Positions 164 to 63,199 of a DNA stretch of 64,000 nt are shown here, piece after piece. Origin of the DNA: Mizuhopecten yessoensis (lineage: Eukaryota); NCBI RefSeq assembly GCF_002113885.1, contig NW_018408899.1, positions 2,118,278 to 2,182,277 on the forward strand, written 5' to 3'. Position numbers and translations under genes: made by a program. Every line of letters begins with the position of its first letter. Within the stretch, counting starts at the first letter, position 1. A model generated the notes under the pieces. The model did not search any database and was not told where the DNA came from. It saw nothing but the letters and a program-made list of their open reading frames with translations.

Positions 164-1373
164 TTTCACTCTCGTGTTGTTGAAATGTTCCCAACTATAT
201 AGTAGTACTTATCCAGCTATACTGACAGATGATTCAGAAGTCATCATATATATAGTGGTGTATGACATAGCGGAATTGAATACAAATCTCGAAAACGTCG
301 TGACGACACGTTTACTTTATCAGCCAAAATTGTGTATGACGTCACTGTGTACGAAATAAACAAAGAAAAGCTATGTCAGTATGTGTCAAATTTATTTTTG
401 GAACAAAATAAAATTCCAAAATCATAACTATATTAGGCCATTTTCGTAACTAGAATAATAAAACAAGAGGTGATATTTCAGACAACGATATCGCTCGAAA
501 ACCAACACAGAAGAACAGCTGATCTTGGTCGTCTGCAAATCGATACTGCGGAGATCCAGACGAAACTTGCCTGGACAGAACAAAGCCGAACATCGCGTTT
601 GAAAATTTGTCTCCTTTTGAACTTTCTTTTAAGCTCTGATTATGTTGCTGAAACAAATATATCATTCATATGTGACCTTCTTGTTTCGTTAAATGTAACA
701 TAAATAATTCCGTTTTCGTTTTTCACCCGGGTTTCCGTTCATTGCGAAACCGGTCATGACGCAGGGAAATTGAACAAACTAAAACGGTATATTTTTATAA
801 GTACTGTCCATTTGAACTTACTTTCCCGTCAACATCAAGTTTTCATCCTACTTGATAAAACTGTGAACCAATACTCACTTTGTTCCATCTGCCATCTCTA
901 TATTTTTAAATAGAATATTCACGCGAGGTCCACGTCCTCTTCACTCACAAAAATGGCCGTAAAGTTATTGTATTTGCTGAACCAATCAACGGGAACTCTT
1001 ATCCGGAAAGACAATCTACATGATAAAGAACATTTCCCATCATAAGAGTGAGGAAAGAAGCTATAAACTTATGATAGTCTGTTTTGTCTGAAAGAGTTTA
1101 TATTGGTTAGTTAAATGATCTAGTATGTGTCATGATGTTTTAAATAATTTTCAGGATTAATAGCTATGTGCGGTTTATATCTGAATTTATATAACATGGT
1201 CACCATTCACGTCGAAATTAATTCCGTCAAAATTGGGGTTTGCTATCAAAACAAAAGAAAGTGTCGCAGTTATTTTTAAGTTTATGAAAGGACTCGGTAT
1301 AAATATAAAGGATCTTACATGAGTTTTAATTTACGAGATTTATGAAGTGAATCTAAGATGGGTTTTTTCCCCC

Positions 1374-3759: not shown

Positions 3760-5874
3760 TTATGACTTACCACAACTAATTTTATTATGATCTGCACCAC
3801 CACAACATGAACATTTCAGTGTCTTTGATTTTTGCCTTTGTGAATTTTCCAAGATTGAGATTCTATTTTGTTTTTCCATGATCTGGCGCAATGCTAGTTG
3901 AGGTTTATGACAGCTGCCTCGAAAGTATTGTTTTGTGATGGTGTCATTTAATTTTTCCAGTCCTTGTTGGGTAAACGAAGAAATATCTCCATGACGCCTG
4001 ATTAATTCATGTGCATGACATCGAAGAATGTGAATGTAAGGTGTGATGTCCCGGGACTGAAAGGCTTCAACATACAGCAAACACCACTCTTTTGTCCGTT
4101 CTTCTAATTCATCAGCATCAGGAGTTTCAGATTTCATAATTTTCTCAATTTGAGAAAAACCATCCCATACTTTCTGCAAAATTTCTGCTCGTCCATCATC
4201 TGAAATGAGATCATTTGCACAGAATGATTTCATCAGTTTCAGTTTTTCTGGGCCAATAAGATCTCTGTACTCAAGGCGCTTTGTATCCCGGTTTACAGAG
4301 AGCGAGAAATGTATTCCCAATTGTTCCAAAACAGTTTCTAATTTTGCGACATGTTGAACTTTACTTCTGTCAATCACTCCTGTGTTGAAGGTAGTGTTTC
4401 CATTTATGTTATCAAGTGTTCTGAGCTCTGCTATAAGCAGATTGAAAAGTTTGTCTGTAATTCTTAGAAACATGTGCAAAGGGTCCACCACAACCCTCAG
4501 TGGACCAATATGTGGGAACAGTGGGGGATTAACTACAGAAAATGCTTTTTTACTAATTTTTTTGCGAGCTTTCAGACAACCGTCAGGGCATTCATACAGA
4601 GACCTAGCACCCTTGGTTACATCCTCCATTGACCATTCTAAATCTAATTTACATTTTTCAGACTTACTGCACTTGCAATACACACAGAAATATTCTGAAG
4701 CTATACAAGGTATTCCCACTGCAACCAAGAGAAACTTATAATCTCCACCAAGGAGTATTTCAATAGTAAAATCCCTTCCATCAACAGTGATAGATGAATC
4801 CTGTAATTCCCCAACTTCCTGTCGTAAATCTCTAAGTCCATCAGCAAGCTCACTGTAAGCTTCCTTCGAATTCATCACACAAAGAGGGTAGTTTCCACTG
4901 GCAGCTCTGCATCTCTTCTCATTGATCACTGTGAATGACACATTTACAACGTGCAGACGTTTACCAACATTTGTACCATCTCCTGATAACTTGATTTTGA
5001 TTTTTCCATCAGGTGCAAATTTATTATCTTCTGCAGTTAATGAATTCAAAACTTGCAAAAGTTTAGTTTTCAAGGACTGTTGGACTCCGAGGCCATTGGG
5101 AGTATCCACAATCTTAAATCCAGTATTTAGCTTATTCACATATTCCTGTAACACATGACGCCTTGGTAATTCTTTACAATACATACTAAGTTCGGCATAT
5201 GCCTCTCTGCTGATATTGAAAGTGTCTAAAATATAAAGCAATGCACTCAACTCATCAGAGTTTTCCTCCATGTCTTGCTTCTCTTTACTTTCTCTGAGCA
5301 CCAACACTTCTTTCTTGCCATTTTCCCTCTCAACCGATACAGACAAAGGTTTTATATTTTCTTTATCCAAGAATTTCAATGACTTTTTCACTGTTTCTCT
5401 CTCCACCTTCCTTCTTTTGGACTGACCAGACTTTGTAAGCTCAGAAAATTTCCGACCAAGTGGCTTTGAACATTCTGGTATGTTATTGTTTTTTACATTA
5501 AGTAAGATAGTTTCTGTTAATTTTTTATTTTCTTCTTGACATTTTAGCAACATTTCTTTATGTTCTTTAAGCACATTTTCACATTCATGTCTATCTACCG
5601 GAGCTTGCCATTCAAATGCAGACGAGGAAAGTTCAGAAAGAAATTTCCTGAATTGGAATCCACCTAGTTTACGTTGTTTTTTTGCTTTGTCTTTCAGCTT
5701 AAAAATTAAAGACTTCAAATTTTTCAAATCACTTTCAGATGGATTCACTTTTACAAAAATTTTGTCTTCAATTTTTCTAATGACCTGGCGAACAAAGTAA
5801 TCATTCATAGGTTTGTCTCGAAACTGATCATTATCAATTATTTCAAACAGAATCTTTTTTGAAAACAAAACCAT
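3760..5874 (-). CDS. RAG1/Transib-like DDE transposase, 704 aa, uninterrupted
   Basis: Motifs: NBD-like GRKFSELTKSGQSKRRK, SGD299G, GGD378YKFL, C397xxC400, DPLH467, ITPYIH615ILRCH620, QQGLE640KLN, and C-terminal CSCCGGADHNKISC (Cx2Cx4Hx4C). Order and spacing parallel mouse RAG1 D600/D708/C727/C730/H795/H937/H942/E962. Confidence 0.9.
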   Translation of the reverse strand: MVLFSKKILFEIIDNDQFRDKPMNDYFVRQVIRKIEDKIFVKVNPSESDLKNLKSLIFKLKDKAKKQRKLGGFQFRKFLSELSSSAFEWQAPVDRHECENVLKEHKEMLLKCQEENKKLTETILLNVKNNNIPECSKPLGRKFSELTKSGQSKRRKVERETVKKSLKFLDKENIKPLSVSVERENGKKEVLVLRESKEKQDMEENSDELSALLYILDTFNISREAYAELSMYCKELPRRHVLQEYVNKLNTGFKIVDTPNGLGVQQSLKTKLLQVLNSLTAEDNKFAPDGKIKIKLSGDGTNVGKRLHVVNVSFTVINEKRCRAASGNYPLCVMNSKEAYSELADGLRDLRQEVGELQDSSITVDGRDFTIEILLGGDYKFLLVAVGIPCIASEYFCVYCKCSKSEKCKLDLEWSMEDVTKGARSLYECPDGCLKARKKISKKAFSVVNPPLFPHIGPLRVVVDPLHMFLRITDKLFNLLIAELRTLDNINGNTTFNTGVIDRSKVQHVAKLETVLEQLGIHFSLSVNRDTKRLEYRDLIGPEKLKLMKSFCANDLISDDGRAEILQKVWDGFSQIEKIMKSETPDADELEERTKEWCLLYVEAFQSRDITPYIHILRCHAHELIRRHGDISSFTQQGLEKLNDTITKQYFRGSCHKPQLALRQIMEKQNRISILENSQRQKSKTLKCSCCGGADHNKISCGKS

Positions 5875-8955: not shown

Positions 8956-9529
8956 AGCCGTTTTTTACTTTCAATGTTAATTTACTTACTTTCAATAAAT
9001 TTTCCTGTTGTTGTTTTTCGTCCGATTTTGATGATATTTTTGGTTTTATTTATATAATTACATTTGTCTTCGTTACTGTGAAGTTTCATCTTCGCATAAA
9101 AGTTACTGTTGACATCATTCCAACAGGCCGCTATGTATTTGCATATTAATATTGTTTTGATAAAATAAATTATCATGTTTAAAAATCTAAGAAATGCATA
9201 GTTATGTTAATGCTATCAATAGAAGCGCTGGGTAATTTCTAGATGTGTGCCAAATTATAAAACAAAATGTTGAAAAAAAGTAAATATTCCTATAATCCGA
9301 AGGGAAAACGGGCATTGTATATCCGAATTTGCCGTCATTTGGTTCTTTGTTTAGAAACAATAAAATTAGTTTCGAAAAAATCCTTGAAAAATAAAGATAA
9401 GAGCGTGTTTATAAAAGCTAATTACAGTTAAATTATGTGTTTTAAATATCATTGACCCACTTTCTTAATGATTTTGATAATTATTCTATTTCAGGGTACG
9501 GAACTAACATGACGTTACATATATTCAAC

Positions 9530-12500
9530 ATGGCTGGCATCAGAGGTAAACAGCAAGTGCTCTGTCATATTTATCATTTAATGTTTATGCGTTGCAAACT
9601 TTACGATTTCAGAAGCACGTGCCTTTTGTTTGTTAGCTTTCATTATTAATATATGATGTTCGTCGATTTTGACGATTGGTTAAACAGATTTTGAAATGTT
9701 TTATGTTGGTTTTCAAACAAGTCGGATGAGTGACAGGTAGACTCACCGTAGAGTCACAAGAGATATACCTGCTATAGAATGTCTGTCACATGAGAGCATT
9801 AGTCATAAAAAACATTTTTTCATAGATATTTTATGAAAATTGTGTATATACCTTATACAAATACAAGTTTTTCTTCTATGATAGATTTTCCTTTTTCCAT
9901 CAGAAAGAGAAATAACAATTTTTTGCACATTTGAAGATAAAATACTGCTACTATTGTGTACTAACTAGATCTGTTTTGTACATGTTTATGTGTATATTAC
10001 CTGGTGAATCTTACTATATGAACACCGACAGCTTTCAAGACTTATGATGCAAGGTTTAAAAACAACATTTTCGTTGAAATCAACGAGTCGTGTTGTTACT
10101 CAACTGATCAAATTGATGGATTTGAAAAGCGCATAGAAAATTTCAAACATTACATGATAACATGGCATCATTCTTTTGTTGTTTGGTTCGAAGTTTTTCT
10201 GGAAATCCAGTCGAACATTATGAGGATATTTGTTTGGGGTTTCACGTCTTTGCAACAGCTACAGTCATTTGATTCGACAGGTTCTAAGGAGACACAGGAA
10301 AATATAGAGATCCGAAGTGTTGTAAAAGGGCACGGAATTATGTTATCTAAGTCCGTGAATAGGGTCAGCAGATCAATTTAGTTTTCTGCATTGAAAAATC
10401 AATGTCCCATTAAGCAGAATTAAGATGTAGAAAAAACCTGATTCTGCAGGGGGCCCCATGCATATATAGCGCAACACACATACCTCCATACACAGAGTTA
10501 TCACCCTTTCTTTCAGATATATTTTTAAAACAAGTTTAAAACAACTCTTCAGATAGTCATTTTGGCTATAAAAGCTCAATATCCATCTTTATAAAGCTCT
10601 GTACTGCACCTAACTAATGAGTCATTACAGGTACTGTTAATATAACGCATCCTTGAAATTTAATTCAAGGGGTTATGCTCACTTACGTTCTCAGCCCCTG
10701 GAATATATCATGTCAAAATAGAAGTCTCGTTGTGTGCCACCTTAAGGATGATACAAGAAGACCAATTTCATCCTTCAATGTGTGTCAAAAGTGTCGTTGG
10801 ACAGTGTAACAGTAAAACTGACTGTCTTTGATGTCGGCTGTCACTCCTCTAGATCTAACTGTCAATTCAGATGATAGGTATATCAGCCTAGCAATTGGCC
10901 AGGCTTTTTTTCCCCCTGAAACCAATCAAATAGCTAGCTGTGTGCCTTCAATTTTGCCATGACATATTCAGGGGTTGCAGAGAACATACTGTAAGTGTGC
11001 ATTACTCCTGGAATTTTGAGGATGACGTAAACATGATAGGTAACCAAGGCAACCAGATAGGTAGCTTGCTATATAAACATCATAATGCAGCAGCTGGTTC
11101 ATTGCCATTTTCCCAGTTCTATGTTTGATTTGTATACTAACGTGCTATAAATCAATATTTTATGAAACTATAAAGCAGCAGTAATTTATACAAATTGTTT
11201 TAAGTTTTCAATGTCGATATAGATACCTAATAAGATATGTATTTTTTTGCGGATTGTATGTAATTTGTCTCCATATAACCATTTAAATATAAAATGAAGT
11301 ATTTAAAAATCTTGCTTCCTACTTACCCTAAGCATAATTTATGAACTGAAAGCAGAAACTCAATAACTCTCATGGTTGACCAAACCAAAAGTGGAGACAA
11401 CAAATATACGTGTATACGATTAGTATATTTATGTAGTCTTTGATGAAACAAACAAATAATTCATTAATTACAACTAAAATTAATCATGCAATTAGAATCG
11501 AGAGACACATGGATGCAAATCTTCATAACTTATAATAAGCTTAAATTTACAACTAAGGCAACATTTTTACTGTGTGATTCTTTCAAGGATTAAAAAGAGT
11601 TCAAGATTATCAATGAAAATTTTATGTTTTTTGGTGTTATAGATATTTTTTTTATTTAAATTGGGTGCAATTAAACTAAATTGTTGTTCTTTTTTTATTT
11701 TTCATTCATGTCAATTCCATCCTGTCAACAAACAGCGTAAGTATTTATTATCTTTAATTCCAATCAGACTTCTTTGTTAGCTTAGCATTCTTTTCTTAAA
11801 AGAAATATGACATTAAACTGAATAATTATTTCCCCTTAAGTAGTTACTACAGTTATGCTAACAATTTTCACCAATTTCTTGATTTTAACTCAAGAACATT
11901 TCTTTATGATAAAATCTTTTTGACAGAAATTGAATACACAATTGGTCTTTTAAAACTAAAGACTTAGATATTCATCATCAGGGATAATTCAAAAATTGAC
12001 TAAATTTCTTAATACTGGTAAGGTTTCTTTTCTTCTATCCTGTCAGTATGACTCAATATAGATGTTGTTATCTTGCATTTGGTGTTAATTGATCTACTTT
12101 CTCATTGTGATGCTAATGCCTTAATTATTTTCCAGGTTGATAAGCCTTGCATTTGCAGCTGCGATAGGTATCACATTTTTGGTGTTAGGATGTGCCCTCC
12201 CACAGTTCAAGTAAGAATAATCTGATCTAACATAAATACATTTGTGTGTCAAGCTTATTTTTAACATTATCTAAAATTGTTGAATGAATTACAGGTATAC
12301 TGGTACATTAATTTATACCAGACATGTGTGTTTCTTGTGTGTAAAATTATATGTATCTTAAAGGCAAAAAGTTCTCTGAACAGCCCTAGGAATACCAACT
12401 CGAGCCATTGTAATTTCAAAGTAGAACAATATATGATATGTACCTTTGACTTTACACTCTTGGATTGTTATATATTATGAATTGGGAAATATCACAAAAA

Positions 12501-15332
12501 AATATTTGTTATTATAAGTATTGAGTAAACTTTTAAATAGAATTTCCACAAAATATCAAACCAAACTAAACCATAACTGTGAAAGCATTTAATGATGATA
12601 TCAAAGTTTTACTTTCTACACAAACAATGTACGTATTAAATGTGTCGCAACGTTTCAAGACCGACGGGTCCCTTTGTCAAGCTATGACTGAGTGAGCCAT
12701 TTAATGGTGTTTTGGTTTCTTTACAGCAATTGGTGGCCCCTGTTTGTGCTGTTTTTCTACATCCTGGCCCCTCTGCCGATGACCCTGTCCAAGCGATGTA
12801 TGAACTCATTTGACTCGTCCAGTAGTGCCTGTTTAGAAATGGCTATCTTTGTTACTACAGGGATAGTTGTGTCATCGATGGGGTTACCATTGGTATTGGC
12901 ACATGTCAGTGTGGTAAGTATTAGGTACATTAAAAAAGTTGAAAAATTAAGGCTACAAATATGCTAATTCCATGTTGGTCAAGTAATCGGACTTAGTCCT
13001 AATGATATTTTGTTCGTTTGTTTATGTTTAACGGCCCATCGACGGCTGTGGTCATTTAGGGCCACCTAATGATATCAATGGCCCTAATGATATCATTGGG
13101 CCAATATGGCATTATCTAATTAATGACACTTTAATTAATTGTCTTTCTAAAATAGCAGAAAAAGTTATTAATTTTAGTGTTCAAATGTCAGAGCTGCGTT
13201 CAGTTGGCATTCATTTCAGTATTGGTTCATGATCAGTTTGTTTTGTATTGGCCCAGTTGGTCGATAATGGCCAAGTCCTAGCCATATTGGCCCAGTTGGT
13301 CAATAATGGCCCATTCCTAGCCATACTGGCCCAGTTGGTCGATAATGGCCAAGTCCTAGCCATATGGTCCAGTTGGTCGATAATGGCCCATTCCTAGCCA
13401 TATTGGCCCAGTTGGTCGATAATGGCCAAGTCCTAGCCATACTGGCCCAGTTGGTCGATAATGGCCAAGTCTTAGCATTATTGGCCCAGTTGGTCGATAA
13501 TGGCCAAGTCCTAGCCATATTAGGCCAGTTGGTCGATAATGGCCCATTCCTAGCCATACTGGCCCAGTTGGTCGATAATGGCCCAGTCCTAGCTATATTG
13601 GCCCAAATGGTCGATAATGGCCCATTCCTAGCCATACTGGCCCAGTTGGTCGATAATGGCCCAGTCCTAGCCATATTGACTCAGTTTGGGCACAGTTTTC
13701 CCATATTATTATCAAGGTGTGAATAGTAAATTTATTCAATATTACATAAACACGGGTACTATATACATGTAATAATGTAATACATGTAATAATGTAATAC
13801 TTACACATGTAGTATATGATAGGCTTATTAGCCAAGGGCCAGTATGGCAGACCAAGGCCTAATAACTTGGCCAATATGGAATAAGCTTGTAAATAACACT
13901 ATCATATAGGTGTATATGTGGGGTTATTAGTTGTGGGCTAATATAACGGACCATGGCTAATAACTTGGCCTAATAGGGATTAAACTTATTATCAAACCTT
14001 CCTATAGTACAATTATAAAAACTTGTGGCCATGGGTGAAGACTGAGGCCTACTAACTGGGTCAATATTAAATTAGCTGATAAATAACACTTTTATTGATT
14101 AACTTTCTAAAAAAGAAAATTAACCATAATTCAACATATTCCACATTATTTGTTTAGTTGATTTATCCCTATCATGTATGGATAGACATTTTATTTTTTC
14201 ACGCTCCCCTTTATTGTCATTGATTGCCATGAGATTGTGCAGCTTTTCAAATGAAAGTCAGTTTAAGTCACTTTTGATACATGTTGATGACATTGTGTGG
14301 TAATACTTCCAACCCAACATCACCTCTCCTTGGATTTCTACTCCAAATGTCACGTTCAACGAAGAACTTCGAATGTGAAGGCCATTGTATATGTAGATTC
14401 CAGCACCATACCTATTCATTGATGATAACTCTAGAAATGTTAGAATGACAAGGGATGAGTTGGATGGAGCAAATCTTGATATTGATCAAGTTTGTTCTTT
14501 ATTGGCCCAGTTCATCCAATATTGCCTCAGTTTATTGGTGATATTGAGTGGGTATTTTGCCATATTTGTATCACTCCTGTTGTAAATATAAGTATATAGG
14601 CTTAATCGTACAAAAAGAGGAAAATGAAAGGGACTTTGAATACAAAAAGGAAAATACTTGGAATTAACATTAAAATACATCTATATTTCAGAATAAAGAT
14701 CTAGGGTTATCCATCGAAACTTGGAAAAGAAAATGAAGCATGTGTTATCAAAAGCATCTTATAATTAAAGAGTCGCCAAATTAACAAGATCTAGAGGCTA
14801 AAGGAGATTAAACACTTATTTGAGTAATACGGAAACAAACATTTGTTTTAGATGGCAGCCATGATAGCCACCTTTGATTCAGATTGATGATTGGCCAATA
14901 ATTGGTATTGTGTATTTATAATTCTGACAAATTTTCTGCTAAACTGACAAAATTAAACTAGATAAGTGTATTAATAAATTTTCAAGATGGCAGCTGTGGT
15001 AGCCATTTTGGATTCACAATTGAATTGGAGGGAAAAACCCCAGCTTAGTCAGGATTGTACGATATTCATTCTTACAATGTTAAGAATTGTAGAAAGACTA
15101 ACTAGAACATTTGGGAGGAAGAAAAAAAAGAATATTCAGGTTATGAATGTCTTTCAGAGTTTAGAAGTTTTTCCATACCTGGGCCAGATAAGCTAATACA
15201 ATGTTGGTTTATTTTCAGATCCAGTGGGGAGCATGTGCGTTGGTGCTGTCAGCTAACATTGTAGTGTTTTTGACAATTCTTGGCTACTTCTATGTTTTCG
15301 ACAGTGATGACCTTGACTATTCAATGTGGTAA
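9530..15332 (+). CDS. LEPROT: Leptin receptor gene-related protein / endospanin (Vps55 family), 130 aa; exons 9530-9545, 11736 (1 nt), 12136-12210, 12727-12913, 15219-15332
   Basis: Spliced product [48 protein letters not shown]...ACLEMAIFVTTGIVVSSMGLPLVLAH...IQWGACALVLSANIVVFLTILGYFYVFDSDDLDYSMW closely matches LEPROT/LEPROTL1. Splice sites are canonical. An acceptor at 9494 implies an upstream non-coding exon. Confidence 0.95.
13250..13690. repeat. 39-bp minisatellite (~11 copies) in a LEPROT intron
   Basis: Unit GGCCCAGTTGGTCGATAATGGCCAAGTCCTAGCCATATT; the 3n period produces spurious repetitive ORFs. Confidence 0.95.
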
Positions 15333-16514: not shown

Positions 16515-17785
16515 GTTTAGTTTCAGTACACAGACATGTACTGGTATGATATTGTGCTGTTTCAGTACACCGACATGTACCGGTATGATATTGTGCTGTT
16601 TAGTTTCAGTACACAGACATGTACCGGTATGATATTGTGCTGTTTAGTTTCAGTACACAGACATGTACCGGTATGATATTGTGCTGTTTAGTTTCAGTAC
16701 ACCGACATGTACCGGTATGATATTGTGCTGTTTAGTTTCAGTACACCGACATGTACCGGTATGATATTGTGCTGTTTAGTTTCAGTACACCGACATGTAC
16801 CGGTATGATATTGTGCTGTTTAGTTTCAGTACACCGACATGTACCGGTATGATATTGTGCTGTTTAGTTTCAGTACACCGACATGTACCGGTATGATATT
16901 GTGCTGTTTAGTTTCAGTACACCGACATGTACCGGTATGATATTGTGCTGTTTAGTTTCAGTACACCGACATGTACCGGTATGATATTGTGCTGTTTAGT
17001 TTCAGTACACCGACATGTACCGGTATGATATTGTGCTGTTTAGTTTCAGTACACCGACATGTACCGGTATGATATTGTGCTGTTTAGTTTCAGTACACCG
17101 ACATGTACCGGTATGATATTGTGCTGTTTAGTTTCAGTACACCGACATGTACCGGTATGATATTGTGCTGTTTAGTTTCAGTACACCGACATGTACCGGT
17201 ATGATATTGTGCTGTTTAGTTTCAGTACACCGACATGTACCGGTATGATATTGTGCTGTTTAGTTTCAGTACACCGACATGTACCGGTATGATATTGTGC
17301 TGTTTAGTTTCAGTACACCGACATGTACCGGTATGATATTGTGCTGTTTAGTTTCAGTACACCGACATGTACCGGTATGATATTGTGCTGTTTAGTTTCA
17401 GTACACCGACATGTACCGGTATGATATTGTGCTGTTTAGTTTCAGTACACCGACATGTACCGGTATGATATTGTGCTGTTTAGTTTCAGTACACCGACAT
17501 GTACCGGTATGATATTGTGCTGTTTAGTTTCAGTACACCGACATGTACCGGTATGATATTGTGCTGTTTAGTTTCAGTACACCGACATGTACCGGTATGA
17601 TATTGTGCTGTTTAGTTTCAGTACACCGACATGTACCGGTATGATATTGTGCTGTTTAGTTTCAGTACACCGACATGTACCGGTATGATATTGTGCTGTT
17701 TAGTTTCAGTACACAGACATGTACCGGTATGATATTGTGCTGTTTAGTTTCAGTACACAGACATGTACCGGTATGATATTGTGCT
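16515..17785. repeat. 44-bp near-perfect minisatellite (~29 copies)
   Basis: Unit GTTTAGTTTCAGTACACCGACATGTACCGGTATGATATTGTGCT. Confidence 0.97.
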
Positions 17786-18717
17786 AATTATATTTCAGCA
17801 CACTTTACAGGCATGGTTAAGTGCTGCTTACTAGAATACTGAACTGAATTAGTAGGATTTAGTACACATTTCTGGTTTGATAGGGCTATTGTGTATTTTG
17901 TATGTAATATCATAATGTAGTAGGTGTCACTATTATGGTAGTACTAGTGCTGCTATTATATTTTAACATCAATTATACATCATGATTTTATTATATATAT
18001 GTGGCAAGTACTGTAATTATGTATTATGTTTTAGCAAACATTACTCGTAAAACTGTGCTATTTAGCACGTATCACTTGTAATATTGAGCAATTATAATTT
18101 AGCACACAATATCTGTTTTTCGTGCATTGTTAACGCATCAATATGTTAGCATGATAAGATGTCTGGGAAAATACGTATACCCTTTTATTCAGTAAAGTGG
18201 TCCGTTTGATTGCCCTCCTTTAAGATGGCTGAGAATTTACAGGAACATAAAAAAGATCAAAGGTAAAATATGAATGTTTAGGGTAAACAAGTGATCAGGT
18301 AGTATAAGTGTTGTTTGTACTAACTAACTTGAAGGAAAGTAATGTATTAAACACAACAGTTGGTATTAAAATCAAAAGCCAATTTTGTACATATATCTGT
18401 AAGATTTTGTTTGTGTACGTCTTGTGAAAATGTCTTCGATGTCAAAGAACAAGAGTTTTTTATAAATCTATATTTGTACTTTCATGGTGTATGATAATCA
18501 GAATACATGTACATAGTGTCGATTCTGCCATCAACACATATGAGACACAAATAAATAACTAAAGTAACGTCAGTTGTTTTTTTAAGTAGTGTACCGTTGA
18601 ATTTTTTTGTGCTCAGCAGAAATCAATGACAGCGTTTCAGAATTAAGGCTTGGTTAGACCTTTTTACCTTTATAAGTAAATTATTTGACATTTTATATAT
18701 ACATCTGCTCATGTATG

Positions 18718-61950: not shown

Positions 61951-63199
61951 TTGCCATATGGTATGAGGCAAGTGACCACACTGAATTGATTTTGAACGAT
62001 AGATGAGAAGAGGTATCCCTGGAGTAGAGAGTATAACGCTCGAGAAGCTAACACAACAGTGATTCTATAATATCAACAGTTAATATCATGTTAGGTTAAT
62101 ATATGTATCATAAAACAGGTTACGATGTGTTACAATTGTGGGCATACAAAGAAAAAACATATTCCGGTATAAAAAAAAATCAAATAAAAAGACTTCACAA
62201 TTGCACATGTAATTCAAAATTTGTTGATAGCTTTCCAAGTTTGCGTCAATGTTGTCTGCTTAGTTGTATCAACAATTACATAAATGTATATCTATGTTCA
62301 AAATACCAAACAGGATGTTTAATTATCTATTAGTCATGATGAAGATTATTACAACAAAAACAATAACAATCTAGTGCTTAGTAAAGACTATATGTTGTCA
62401 ATCTACCTTTGATATTTCATCTAATGTAAACACATTTATATACTGTTATATAGCACAGCATAAATTAAGTTAGTATTGTATAATAGTGTAAGTATTGTAT
62501 AATAGTGTAATCTGTTTAAACCGTCTGATCCACTAACCTGTATAAACCAGACCTTCATCACGGTACATTGATGTATAATCCACAAACCAGATTTGGATCA
62601 ATCATATGCTTTTTTTATGCGAGCTGAACCTGTTTATTCCCAACTTTTTTATTTCCAATAAATACAGTAACAGCTCATCTACACCAGGTTTTCGTATTAG
62701 ACAAATTTCACTCAACACATAACCATTGCATAATCTAGGACGCATTCCTTTTTACACAGCAGAAGCTTGGTTATACGAACAGATCTACAAAAAATAACCT
62801 TTTTTTCTGAAACCACTTGGTCTGGATTAGAGAGGTTCTGCTGTATCCAAACTCTGGTATCCTTTTATACCCAACAGTAATACATTGTATATGATACATT
62901 GTACAATGTAAGAAAATCTAGAAACATTTTTACCCTGCAATACATTTATCTCCAACTCTACAATTATCCTTGAACGCAATGTATTATTGTCATAAAAAGC
63001 TACTACAGATAGAAATATCACAAACAACTTTTTTTTTCAAAGATAGGAAGTGATCTTTTAGTATTAATATGTACAATTCATATATTTGGTAGGATTACAA
63101 TTATTTAGCTTGGCACTCATACAAACACAAAAGTAATAACAACAAAAACAAAAAAACTTTTATATCTACATATAAATTGTAAAAAAGAACATTTCTCCA

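What the first reader, a model, noticed from the sequence alone, without database searches (positions are those of the whole stretch)
11640..12210. Apparent single-nucleotide exon (C at 11736) in LEPROT/Vps55
Exon 1 ends in phase 1 (ATG GCT GGC ATC AGA G|gt), but the exon at 12136 supplies only one base before TTG ATA AGC. Direct splicing gives GGT TGA, a stop. At 11733-11742 the intron reads CAG|C|GTAAGT, an acceptor and a consensus donor one base apart, preceded by a ~90-nt AG-free pyrimidine-rich tract with a branch-like ACTAAA. G+C+G = GCG = Ala, giving MAGIRALISL, matching MAGIKALISL of LEPROTL1. One-nt exons are known from plants (Arabidopsis APC11; I recall plant VPS55 too, unverified) but would be remarkable in an animal. 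Alternative: an in-frame ATG at 11708 could make 11708-11736 an alternative first exon (MSIPSCQQTA).
Basis: partly seen in the sequence, partly recalled or inferred. Interest (0 to 1): 0.85.

Follow-up and report, generated by a model that had tools for sequence, protein, structure and literature searches.

The report
One-base exon conserved across invertebrates
A scallop membrane-trafficking gene (LEPROT/Vps55) builds its message by splicing in an exon just one DNA letter long, and the same one-letter exon sits at the same spot in molluscs, lamp shells, ribbon worms, annelids, rotifers and arthropods, where gene annotations miss it.

Summary
Confirmed. The window is a scallop LEPROT/Vps55 gene. 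A spliced transcript contig joins 9545 to 12136 with exactly one extra letter, C. Unspliced contigs show no missing base at either flank. The only AG-C-GT in the 2590-nt interval is at 11736.

All 14 fetched loci that hold both flanking exons and need a C have exactly one YAG-C-GTRAGT, against 0.03 expected in total. They include Pecten, Argopecten, Solemya, Haliotis, Lingula, Tubulanus, Owenia and a mite-like locus. Bdelloid-rotifer loci keep the exon as G with a GC donor. A second bivalve shows both partly spliced forms. Callorhinchus and copepod-like loci keep only the upstream intron; one rotifer-like locus keeps only the downstream one, which looks like a one-base intron slide.

The alternative first exon (MSIPS-) is not conserved. 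One-base spliceosomal exons are published for plants (APC11, VPS55) and Fusarium; I found none for an animal nuclear gene. The plant VPS55 exon has the same phase and lies 19 versus 16 nt from the ATG; homology is untested. The scan's earlier notes held nothing on this.

The parts
9530..9545 (+). First coding exon, coding part (16 nt, MAGIR + G, phase 1); the transcript reaches back at least to 9524
   Evidence: (X7 contig, 22 letters before the joint)
9546..11735 (+). Upstream intron A (2190 nt, GT-AG; donor GTAAAC is off consensus)
11643..11733 (+). AG-free, T-rich zone before the one-base exon (91 nt); holds branch-point candidates ACTAAA 11675-11680 and the conserved T-run + TTCAT(G) 11701-11710
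   Evidence: branch use is inferred, not shown
11736..11736 (+). One-nucleotide exon C, middle base of the Ala6 codon GCG
   Evidence: table 5c
11737..12135 (+). Downstream intron B (399 nt; donor GTAAGT is full consensus)
12136..12210 (+). 75-nt exon starting in phase 2; first transmembrane helix, Pfam Vps55 positions 1-23
12727..12913 (+). 187-nt exon, Pfam Vps55 positions 24-88
   Evidence: (joint 12210-12727 in three RNA runs)
15219..15332 (+). Last coding exon with stop codon, Pfam Vps55 positions 90-120; the whole protein is 130 aa by exon arithmetic
   Evidence: the joint 12913-15219 was not covered by the reads call
11708..11710 (+). In-frame intronic ATG (MSIPSCQQT); not conserved, probably part of the TTCATG intron motif

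Best explanation
C11736 is a real, frame-essential internal exon of one nucleotide, spliced by the major (GT-AG) spliceosome in two separate steps. Shown: the mature mRNA reads exon 1 - C - exon 2, and the C has only one canonical source. Inferred mechanism: the exon is too small to be defined by factors bound across it, so it is recognised through intronic signals, a full-consensus donor (GTRAGT) and a long AG-free T-rich zone with a distal branch point. Most likely the downstream intron goes first and fuses the C to exon 2; this recreates the 76-nt phase-1 exon that vertebrates have permanently. The upstream intron, whose donor is weak, goes second and is sometimes retained. Because exon 1 and the acceptor both end in AG, the downstream donor keeps the same AG-C/GT context in either order, so the other order is also possible. 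Skipping the C gives an immediate stop (GGT TGA). The arrangement dates at least to the protostome ancestor (parsimony on the accepted animal phylogeny, no gene tree built), and either intron has since been lost in some lineages.
For:: X7 contig (864 nt, depth 30.8) joins 9545 to 12136 with GT..AG ends and one letter C between, then 12210 to 12727. X11 (DNA of another sample) covers 11654-12218 with no other letters and one 7-nt gap at 11868. X17 covers 9534-9798 unspliced without gaps; unique AGCGT; 14 of 14 loci, 0.03 expected in total; named genomes of four phyla, plus mite-like, insect-like and rotifer loci (taxa). The site is absent from the first intron where exon 2 starts in phase 1; transcript-derived invertebrate proteins read MAG[IV]RALI, while most genome-annotated ones have garbled N-termini; one bivalve species gives intron+C+exon 2 in one run and a different intron+exon 2 in another. 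AG-free zone median 70 nt versus 33 nt at exon 2, and TTTYAYG in 13 of 23 versus 0 of 23 acceptors. PMC9929638: human cells splice an engineered 1-bp exon, with distal branch points in that gene.
Against: The full scallop junction is seen in one contig of one run, with 22 letters on the short side; contigs give no inclusion level. X7 is RNA only by a guess of the index, although the contig is spliced. No lariat, minigene or base-substitution test was possible. The order of splicing rests on indirect signs, and L090 shows that intron B can also be retained. The loci in the motif statistics are related and not independent.
Confidence: 0.96

Rival explanations
1. 11708-11736 is an alternative first exon (MSIPSCQQTA) and is the only thing spliced to 12136; the site is conserved for that reason. 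This is how RefSeq models the Pecten and Argopecten genes.
For: In-frame ATG at 11708. RefSeq proteins P0001 and P0002 start this way. An in-frame ATG lies within 25 codons in 14 of 28 loci, against 7 and 5 in the other frames. Plants make a second protein from upstream-intron retention (PMC8831610).
Against: X7 shows exon 1 joined through the C. ATG position and peptide differ even among three scallops. There is no in-frame ATG in Haliotis, Lingula, Tubulanus, the insect-like, mite-like and rotifer loci, and an in-frame TGA follows the ATG in L089. ATG is part of the conserved TTCATG motif, which inflates the count. The 16-nt MAGIR exon is conserved in all complete loci.
Confidence: 0.02
2. 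Assembly error or allele difference: a C is missing from the assembly at 9545/9546 or 12135/12136.
For: One-base discrepancies between cDNA and genome are commonly such errors (general knowledge).
Against: Independent unspliced contigs match the assembly at both flanks (records 4 and 8; record 8 has only 12 letters left of the donor). The same phase mismatch recurs in 14 independent assemblies with the same AG-C-GT solution, and in 5 rotifer loci with a G.
Confidence: 0.005
3. The C is inserted without a template, by insertional RNA editing or a splicing by-product, and the intronic site is a zero-length recursive splice point or a coincidence.
For: A one-letter insertion cannot be traced to its source by sequence alone. 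AG/GT ratchet points exist in animals (established knowledge).
Against: The intronic base matches the needed codon base (C for Ala) in every locus, and lineages whose exon 2 starts with that base lack the site. L089 shows the C attached to the intron that precedes it. Recursive points have zero length and would leave the frameshift.
Confidence: 0.015

Closest known systems
Plant VPS55-1 one-nucleotide microexon (cluster 2 of Yu et al. 2022, PMC8831610; also Zygnema, PMC11096116)
   Same: Same gene family, size 1, phase 1, conserved GTRAGT donor, directly after a short first coding exon and before the first transmembrane helix, missed by annotation with a wrong N-terminus, and upstream-intron-retained forms occur.
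   Different: The first coding exon is 19 nt in plants and 16 nt here (19-25 nt in copepod-like and rotifer loci). The base is C here and A or G in the plant examples, as I read the paper's text. Plants use the retained form for a second protein; no such conserved form was found here. Identity of the alignment column was not tested.
Arabidopsis APC11 single-nucleotide exon (Guo and Liu 2015, PMC4674806)
   Same: Constitutive, frame-essential one-base exon between two GT-AG introns, with a putative branch point 44 nt upstream.
   Different: Unrelated gene, plant.
Fusarium CYP621A one-nucleotide exon (Nelson and Syed 2026, PMC12940212)
   Same: Phase-1 to phase-2 mismatch solved by a middle-base exon, conserved across species and supported by RNA reads.
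   Different: Fungal P450, confined to one genus, with short introns. Here the introns are 0.05-4 kb and the range spans several phyla.
Placozoan cox1 single-base exon (Osigus et al. 2017, PMC5436844)
   Same: A one-base C exon in an animal.
   Different: Mitochondrial and flanked by group I self-splicing introns, not spliceosomal.
Human MPC1 4-nt constitutive microexon (PMC9929638)
   Same: Constitutive, not a multiple of three, depends on a long upstream pyrimidine zone and distal branch points; still spliced when cut to 1 bp.
   Different: The natural size is 4 nt; the authors found no natural 1-bp exon in the human genome.
LEPROT/LEPROTL1 (endospanin) / Vps55 family, PF04133
   Same: Three exons tile Pfam Vps55 positions 1-120. 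Exon sizes 16, 76 (1+75), 187; the first two match the Callorhinchus gene.
   Different: Vertebrates keep only the upstream intron, with the C as first base of exon 2.

Membership tests
Spliceosomal one-nucleotide exon | Mature mRNA carries one base that is absent from both flanking exons in genomic DNA | tested here: met
   joint 9545-12136 with C between; unspliced contigs match the assembly at both flanks
Spliceosomal one-nucleotide exon | That base is flanked by canonical AG and GT inside the interval, uniquely | tested here: met
   only AGCGT in 2590 nt
Spliceosomal one-nucleotide exon | Needed for the reading frame and conserved in orthologues | tested here: met
Spliceosomal one-nucleotide exon | Each flanking intron is removed as a separate unit | tested here: inconclusive
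   both partly spliced forms seen in another bivalve; not seen directly in this scallop
Spliceosomal one-nucleotide exon | Substituting the genomic base changes the mRNA base | not testable with these tools
   needs a minigene
Plant VPS55 cluster-2 microexon (homology) | Same gene family, size and phase | tested here: met
   (size 1, phase 1, Vps55)
Plant VPS55 cluster-2 microexon (homology) | Same column in a protein alignment | tested here: inconclusive
   no plant protein was returned; blocks 19,1,52 from the start codon against 16,1,75 here are compatible only
Plant VPS55 cluster-2 microexon (homology) | Conserved second protein made by upstream-intron retention | tested here: not met
   in-frame ATG not conserved in position or peptide
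Recursive (zero-length) splice site | AG directly followed by GT, nothing added to the mRNA | tested here: not met
   one base lies between them and appears in the mRNA
Neural SRRM4/eMIC-type microexon | Alternative, usually a multiple of 3 nt, with a UGC motif next to the acceptor | tested here: not met
   1 nt and frame-essential; no TGC between 11689 and the AG in the window; tissue regulation not tested
LEPROT/Vps55 family (PF04133) | Vps55 profile match over the whole length | tested here: met
   exon by exon, 92% to the Pecten maximus protein

The most novel reading that the evidence does not exclude
The animal one-base exon is the same exon as the plant VPS55 one. The tandem introns would then date to the common ancestor of plants and animals and have been kept for over a billion years, perhaps because slow removal of the upstream intron regulates the gene. 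Reciprocal loss of one or the other intron (vertebrates, copepods and nematodes versus one rotifer lineage) would be a caught-in-the-act mechanism for one-base intron sliding.
Probability: 0.5. Interest if true: 0.9.

Novelty: new member of a known kind. Interest (0 to 1): 0.8.

Why it matters
It appears to be the first natural one-base spliceosomal exon in an animal nuclear gene within the searchable literature; a 2023 paper found none in human. It is not a local oddity: it is conserved across protostomes, with introns of 50 nt to 4 kb. That gives a natural series for testing how a spliceosome handles an exon too small for exon definition, which signals are needed and in what order. The reciprocal intron losses make the old question of one-base intron sliding directly testable. 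It also explains why public LEPROT/Vps55 protein models across molluscs, annelids, brachiopods, nemerteans, mites and rotifers have wrong N-termini, and it suggests a simple screen (phase-1 to phase-2 mismatches) for more such exons.

Tried and rejected
Other parses of the extra letter (a 2- or 3-nt exon using neighbouring bases) were rejected because they lack AG/GT ends. AG-C-GC sites at 10130 and 10470 exist, but their donors are poor and the site found in orthologues is the GT one. A conserved alternative N-terminus was rejected. No plant protein could be obtained: three homolog searches, one representative search and one metagenome scan returned animals only; the paper's alignments are images; the Atlas names a Streptophyta cluster without sequences. 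No solved structure exists for the family by sequence. Limulus and Tachypleus loci were not on record. The cnidarian state could not be read: those contigs look like transcripts. Locus L010 reads like human or mammalian LEPROT: it came back and passed through the bulk motif print, and was left out of all later work, as was vertebrate locus L076.

Full report
OBSERVATION. The first coding exon is 9530-9545 (16 nt, phase 1). The next large exon is 12136-12210 (75 nt, one base before a Leu codon). Joining them directly gives GGT TGA. CAG, C and GTAAGT lie at 11733-11742. It is the only AGCGT in the 2590-nt interval and the only YAG-C-GTRAGT in the window, with 0.003 expected in the interval, and it ends the longest AG-free stretch of the interval (91 nt).

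THE GENE. The three larger exons, searched one by one, tile Pfam Vps55 positions 1-23, 24-88 and 90-120. The closest proteins are from Pecten maximus (92%) and Argopecten irradians (89%), so the window is most likely a scallop. The family acts in endosomal and Golgi trafficking (PMC5385356; PMC12846817).

TRANSCRIPT EVIDENCE. One reads call was available (9300-13100, four runs, all contigs). Run X7 has an 864-nt contig that joins 9545 to 12136 with GT..AG ends and exactly one letter, C, between them, and then joins 12210 to 12727. DNA of another sample (X11) covers 11654-12218 with no other letters apart from a 7-nt gap at 11868. An unspliced X17 contig covers 9534-9798 without gaps. So no base is missing from the assembly at either flank. 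Limits: one contig, 22 letters on the short side, no inclusion level. There are two weaker signs. First, the X8 contig begins exactly three letters before 12136, where a spliced form and an intron-A-retaining form (both ending AGC) would branch. Second, the three RNA runs have contigs in intron A but none in intron B. Neither proves anything, since contigs are filtered.

CONSERVATION. The same site, AG-C-GTRAGT between a 16-nt phase-1 exon and a phase-2 exon, is in Pecten, Argopecten, Solemya, Haliotis, the brachiopod Lingula, the nemertean Tubulanus and the annelid Owenia. Metagenome loci add many annelid-like and mollusc-like cases, a locus 88% identical to the mite Oppiella nova, and an insect-like locus ('insect-like' rests on my recollection of the neighbouring VCP sequence). 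Of 14 loci tested that hold both flanking exons, 14 have exactly one YAG-C-GTRAGT, against 0.03 expected in total. Five bdelloid-rotifer-like loci (57-74% to Adineta steineri where compared) keep the layout with introns of 46-64 nt, but the base is G and the donor is GCAAGT, which gives Gly. Two arthropod-like loci have A. The G and A cases lack cDNA proof. Genome-annotated proteins of these groups nearly all have garbled N-termini, while transcript-derived ones read MAG[IV]RALI.

A SECOND SPECIES SHOWS BOTH HALF-SPLICED FORMS. L089 and L090 come from two runs of one bivalve (370 of 372 coding bases identical) and have all later introns removed. L089 has about 870 nt of intron ending in CAACAG, then C, then exon 2. 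L090 has a different intron ending in TTTGTAG, then exon 2 without the C. Two acceptors thus precede exon 2, one C apart.

LOSSES. Callorhinchus has one phase-1 intron, and its exon 2 starts with the C. Copepod-like and nematode-like loci also keep only the upstream intron. One rotifer-like locus, L087, keeps only the downstream intron: its first exon ends in GG before GT. Compared directly, those genes would look like an intron that slid by one base; the tandem arrangement explains it by reciprocal loss (inference). Presence in Spiralia and Ecdysozoa puts the exon at least in the protostome ancestor, by parsimony on the accepted phylogeny; no gene tree was built. Cnidarian-like contigs retain the upstream intron with later introns gone, so they look like transcripts and cannot show whether the second intron exists.

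HOW IT MOST LIKELY WORKS. Shown: inclusion of the C, its unique canonical source and its conservation. Measured: the donor after the exon is GTRAGT in all 23 C loci, while the exon 1 donor is usually off consensus. The AG-free zone is 70 nt (median) against 33 nt at exon 2. A TTTYAYG motif lies 31-50 nt upstream in 13 of 23 loci and at none of the exon 2 acceptors (loci not independent). Inferred: recognition relies on these intronic signals and a distal branch point, as in human MPC1, where branch points lie at about -68 and -64 and an engineered 1-bp exon is still spliced (PMC9929638). The downstream intron probably goes first, giving the vertebrate-type 76-nt exon; the upstream intron follows and is sometimes retained (about 0.65 for this order). 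Why selection keeps the arrangement is open. Inertia is enough, since only precise intron loss can remove it; regulation by intron retention is possible.

RIVALS. A coding alternative first exon is what RefSeq models, but the ATG is not conserved in position or peptide and is missing in many lineages. It may exist as a minor retained-intron form. Assembly error and untemplated insertion are excluded or very unlikely for the reasons listed under rivals.

WHAT IS KNOWN. One-base spliceosomal exons are published for Arabidopsis APC11 (PMC4674806), plant VPS55 (PMC8831610; Zygnema, PMC11096116), Fusarium CYP621A (PMC12940212) and yeast snoRNA host transcripts (PMC5033589). In animals I found only the mitochondrial placozoan cox1 case with group I introns (PMC5436844). 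Ten searches of the open library found no animal nuclear case; subscription journals and curated databases were not searched. The plant VPS55 exon is size 1, phase 1, with blocks 19,1,52 cut at the start codon, against 16,1,75 here. From memory only, the annotated Arabidopsis protein begins shortly before the ACA motif in a way that would put plant codon 7 on animal codon 6. This is a lead, not a test, as no plant sequence was obtained.

VERDICT. A real one-nucleotide exon (0.96). It is a new member of a known kind, apparently new for animal nuclear genes and unusually old. Interest 0.8; 0.9 if homologous to the plant exon (probability about 0.5). The scan's earlier notes held nothing on this feature. 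Locus L010, taken for human or mammalian, was left out.

Noticed in passing
window 202-1008; L001, L002, L004, L005, L008, L081: VCP/CDC48 lies head to head with LEPROT in scallops, abalone, Lingula, Owenia and an insect-like locus; membralin follows downstream in Lingula as in the window. Old microsynteny; here a transposase-like ORF (3760-5874) sits between the two genes.
   Followed up: partly
window 9509-9529: An in-frame upstream ATG could add MTLHIFN before MAGIR. It is absent in Pecten and Argopecten, which have a TGACGTCA (CRE-like) motif there; probably not used.
   Followed up: partly
L041, L072, L079, L085, L088: Bdelloid-rotifer-like genes have a one-base G exon with a GC donor between introns of only 46-64 nt; the Adineta steineri model skips the following exon.
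   Followed up: partly
L065:2129 and L066: Arthropod-like loci with a one-base A exon, which would give Glu at residue 6; no cDNA proof.
   Followed up: no
L087:361-450: Rotifer-like gene with only the downstream (phase 2) intron: an apparent one-base intron slide relative to vertebrates.
   Followed up: partly
L016, L017, L020, L021, L022: Cnidarian-like contigs retain the first intron while all later introns are absent; in L017 an intronic in-frame ATG gives MDESIA-, and L016 has a similar one.
   Followed up: no
window 62484-62493: A second YAG-N-GTRAGT (TAG, T, GTAAGT) on the + strand, without a pyrimidine tract; probably chance.
   Followed up: no
window 10920-11000, 12596-12700, 13009-13064: Short high-copy interspersed repeats inside the introns (contig depth in the thousands).
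   Followed up: no
window 13250-13690 and 16520-17790: Tandem arrays with units of about 39 and 42 nt, inside the last intron and after the gene.
   Followed up: no
L010: Contig reads like human or mammalian LEPROT cDNA; left out of further work.
   Followed up: no
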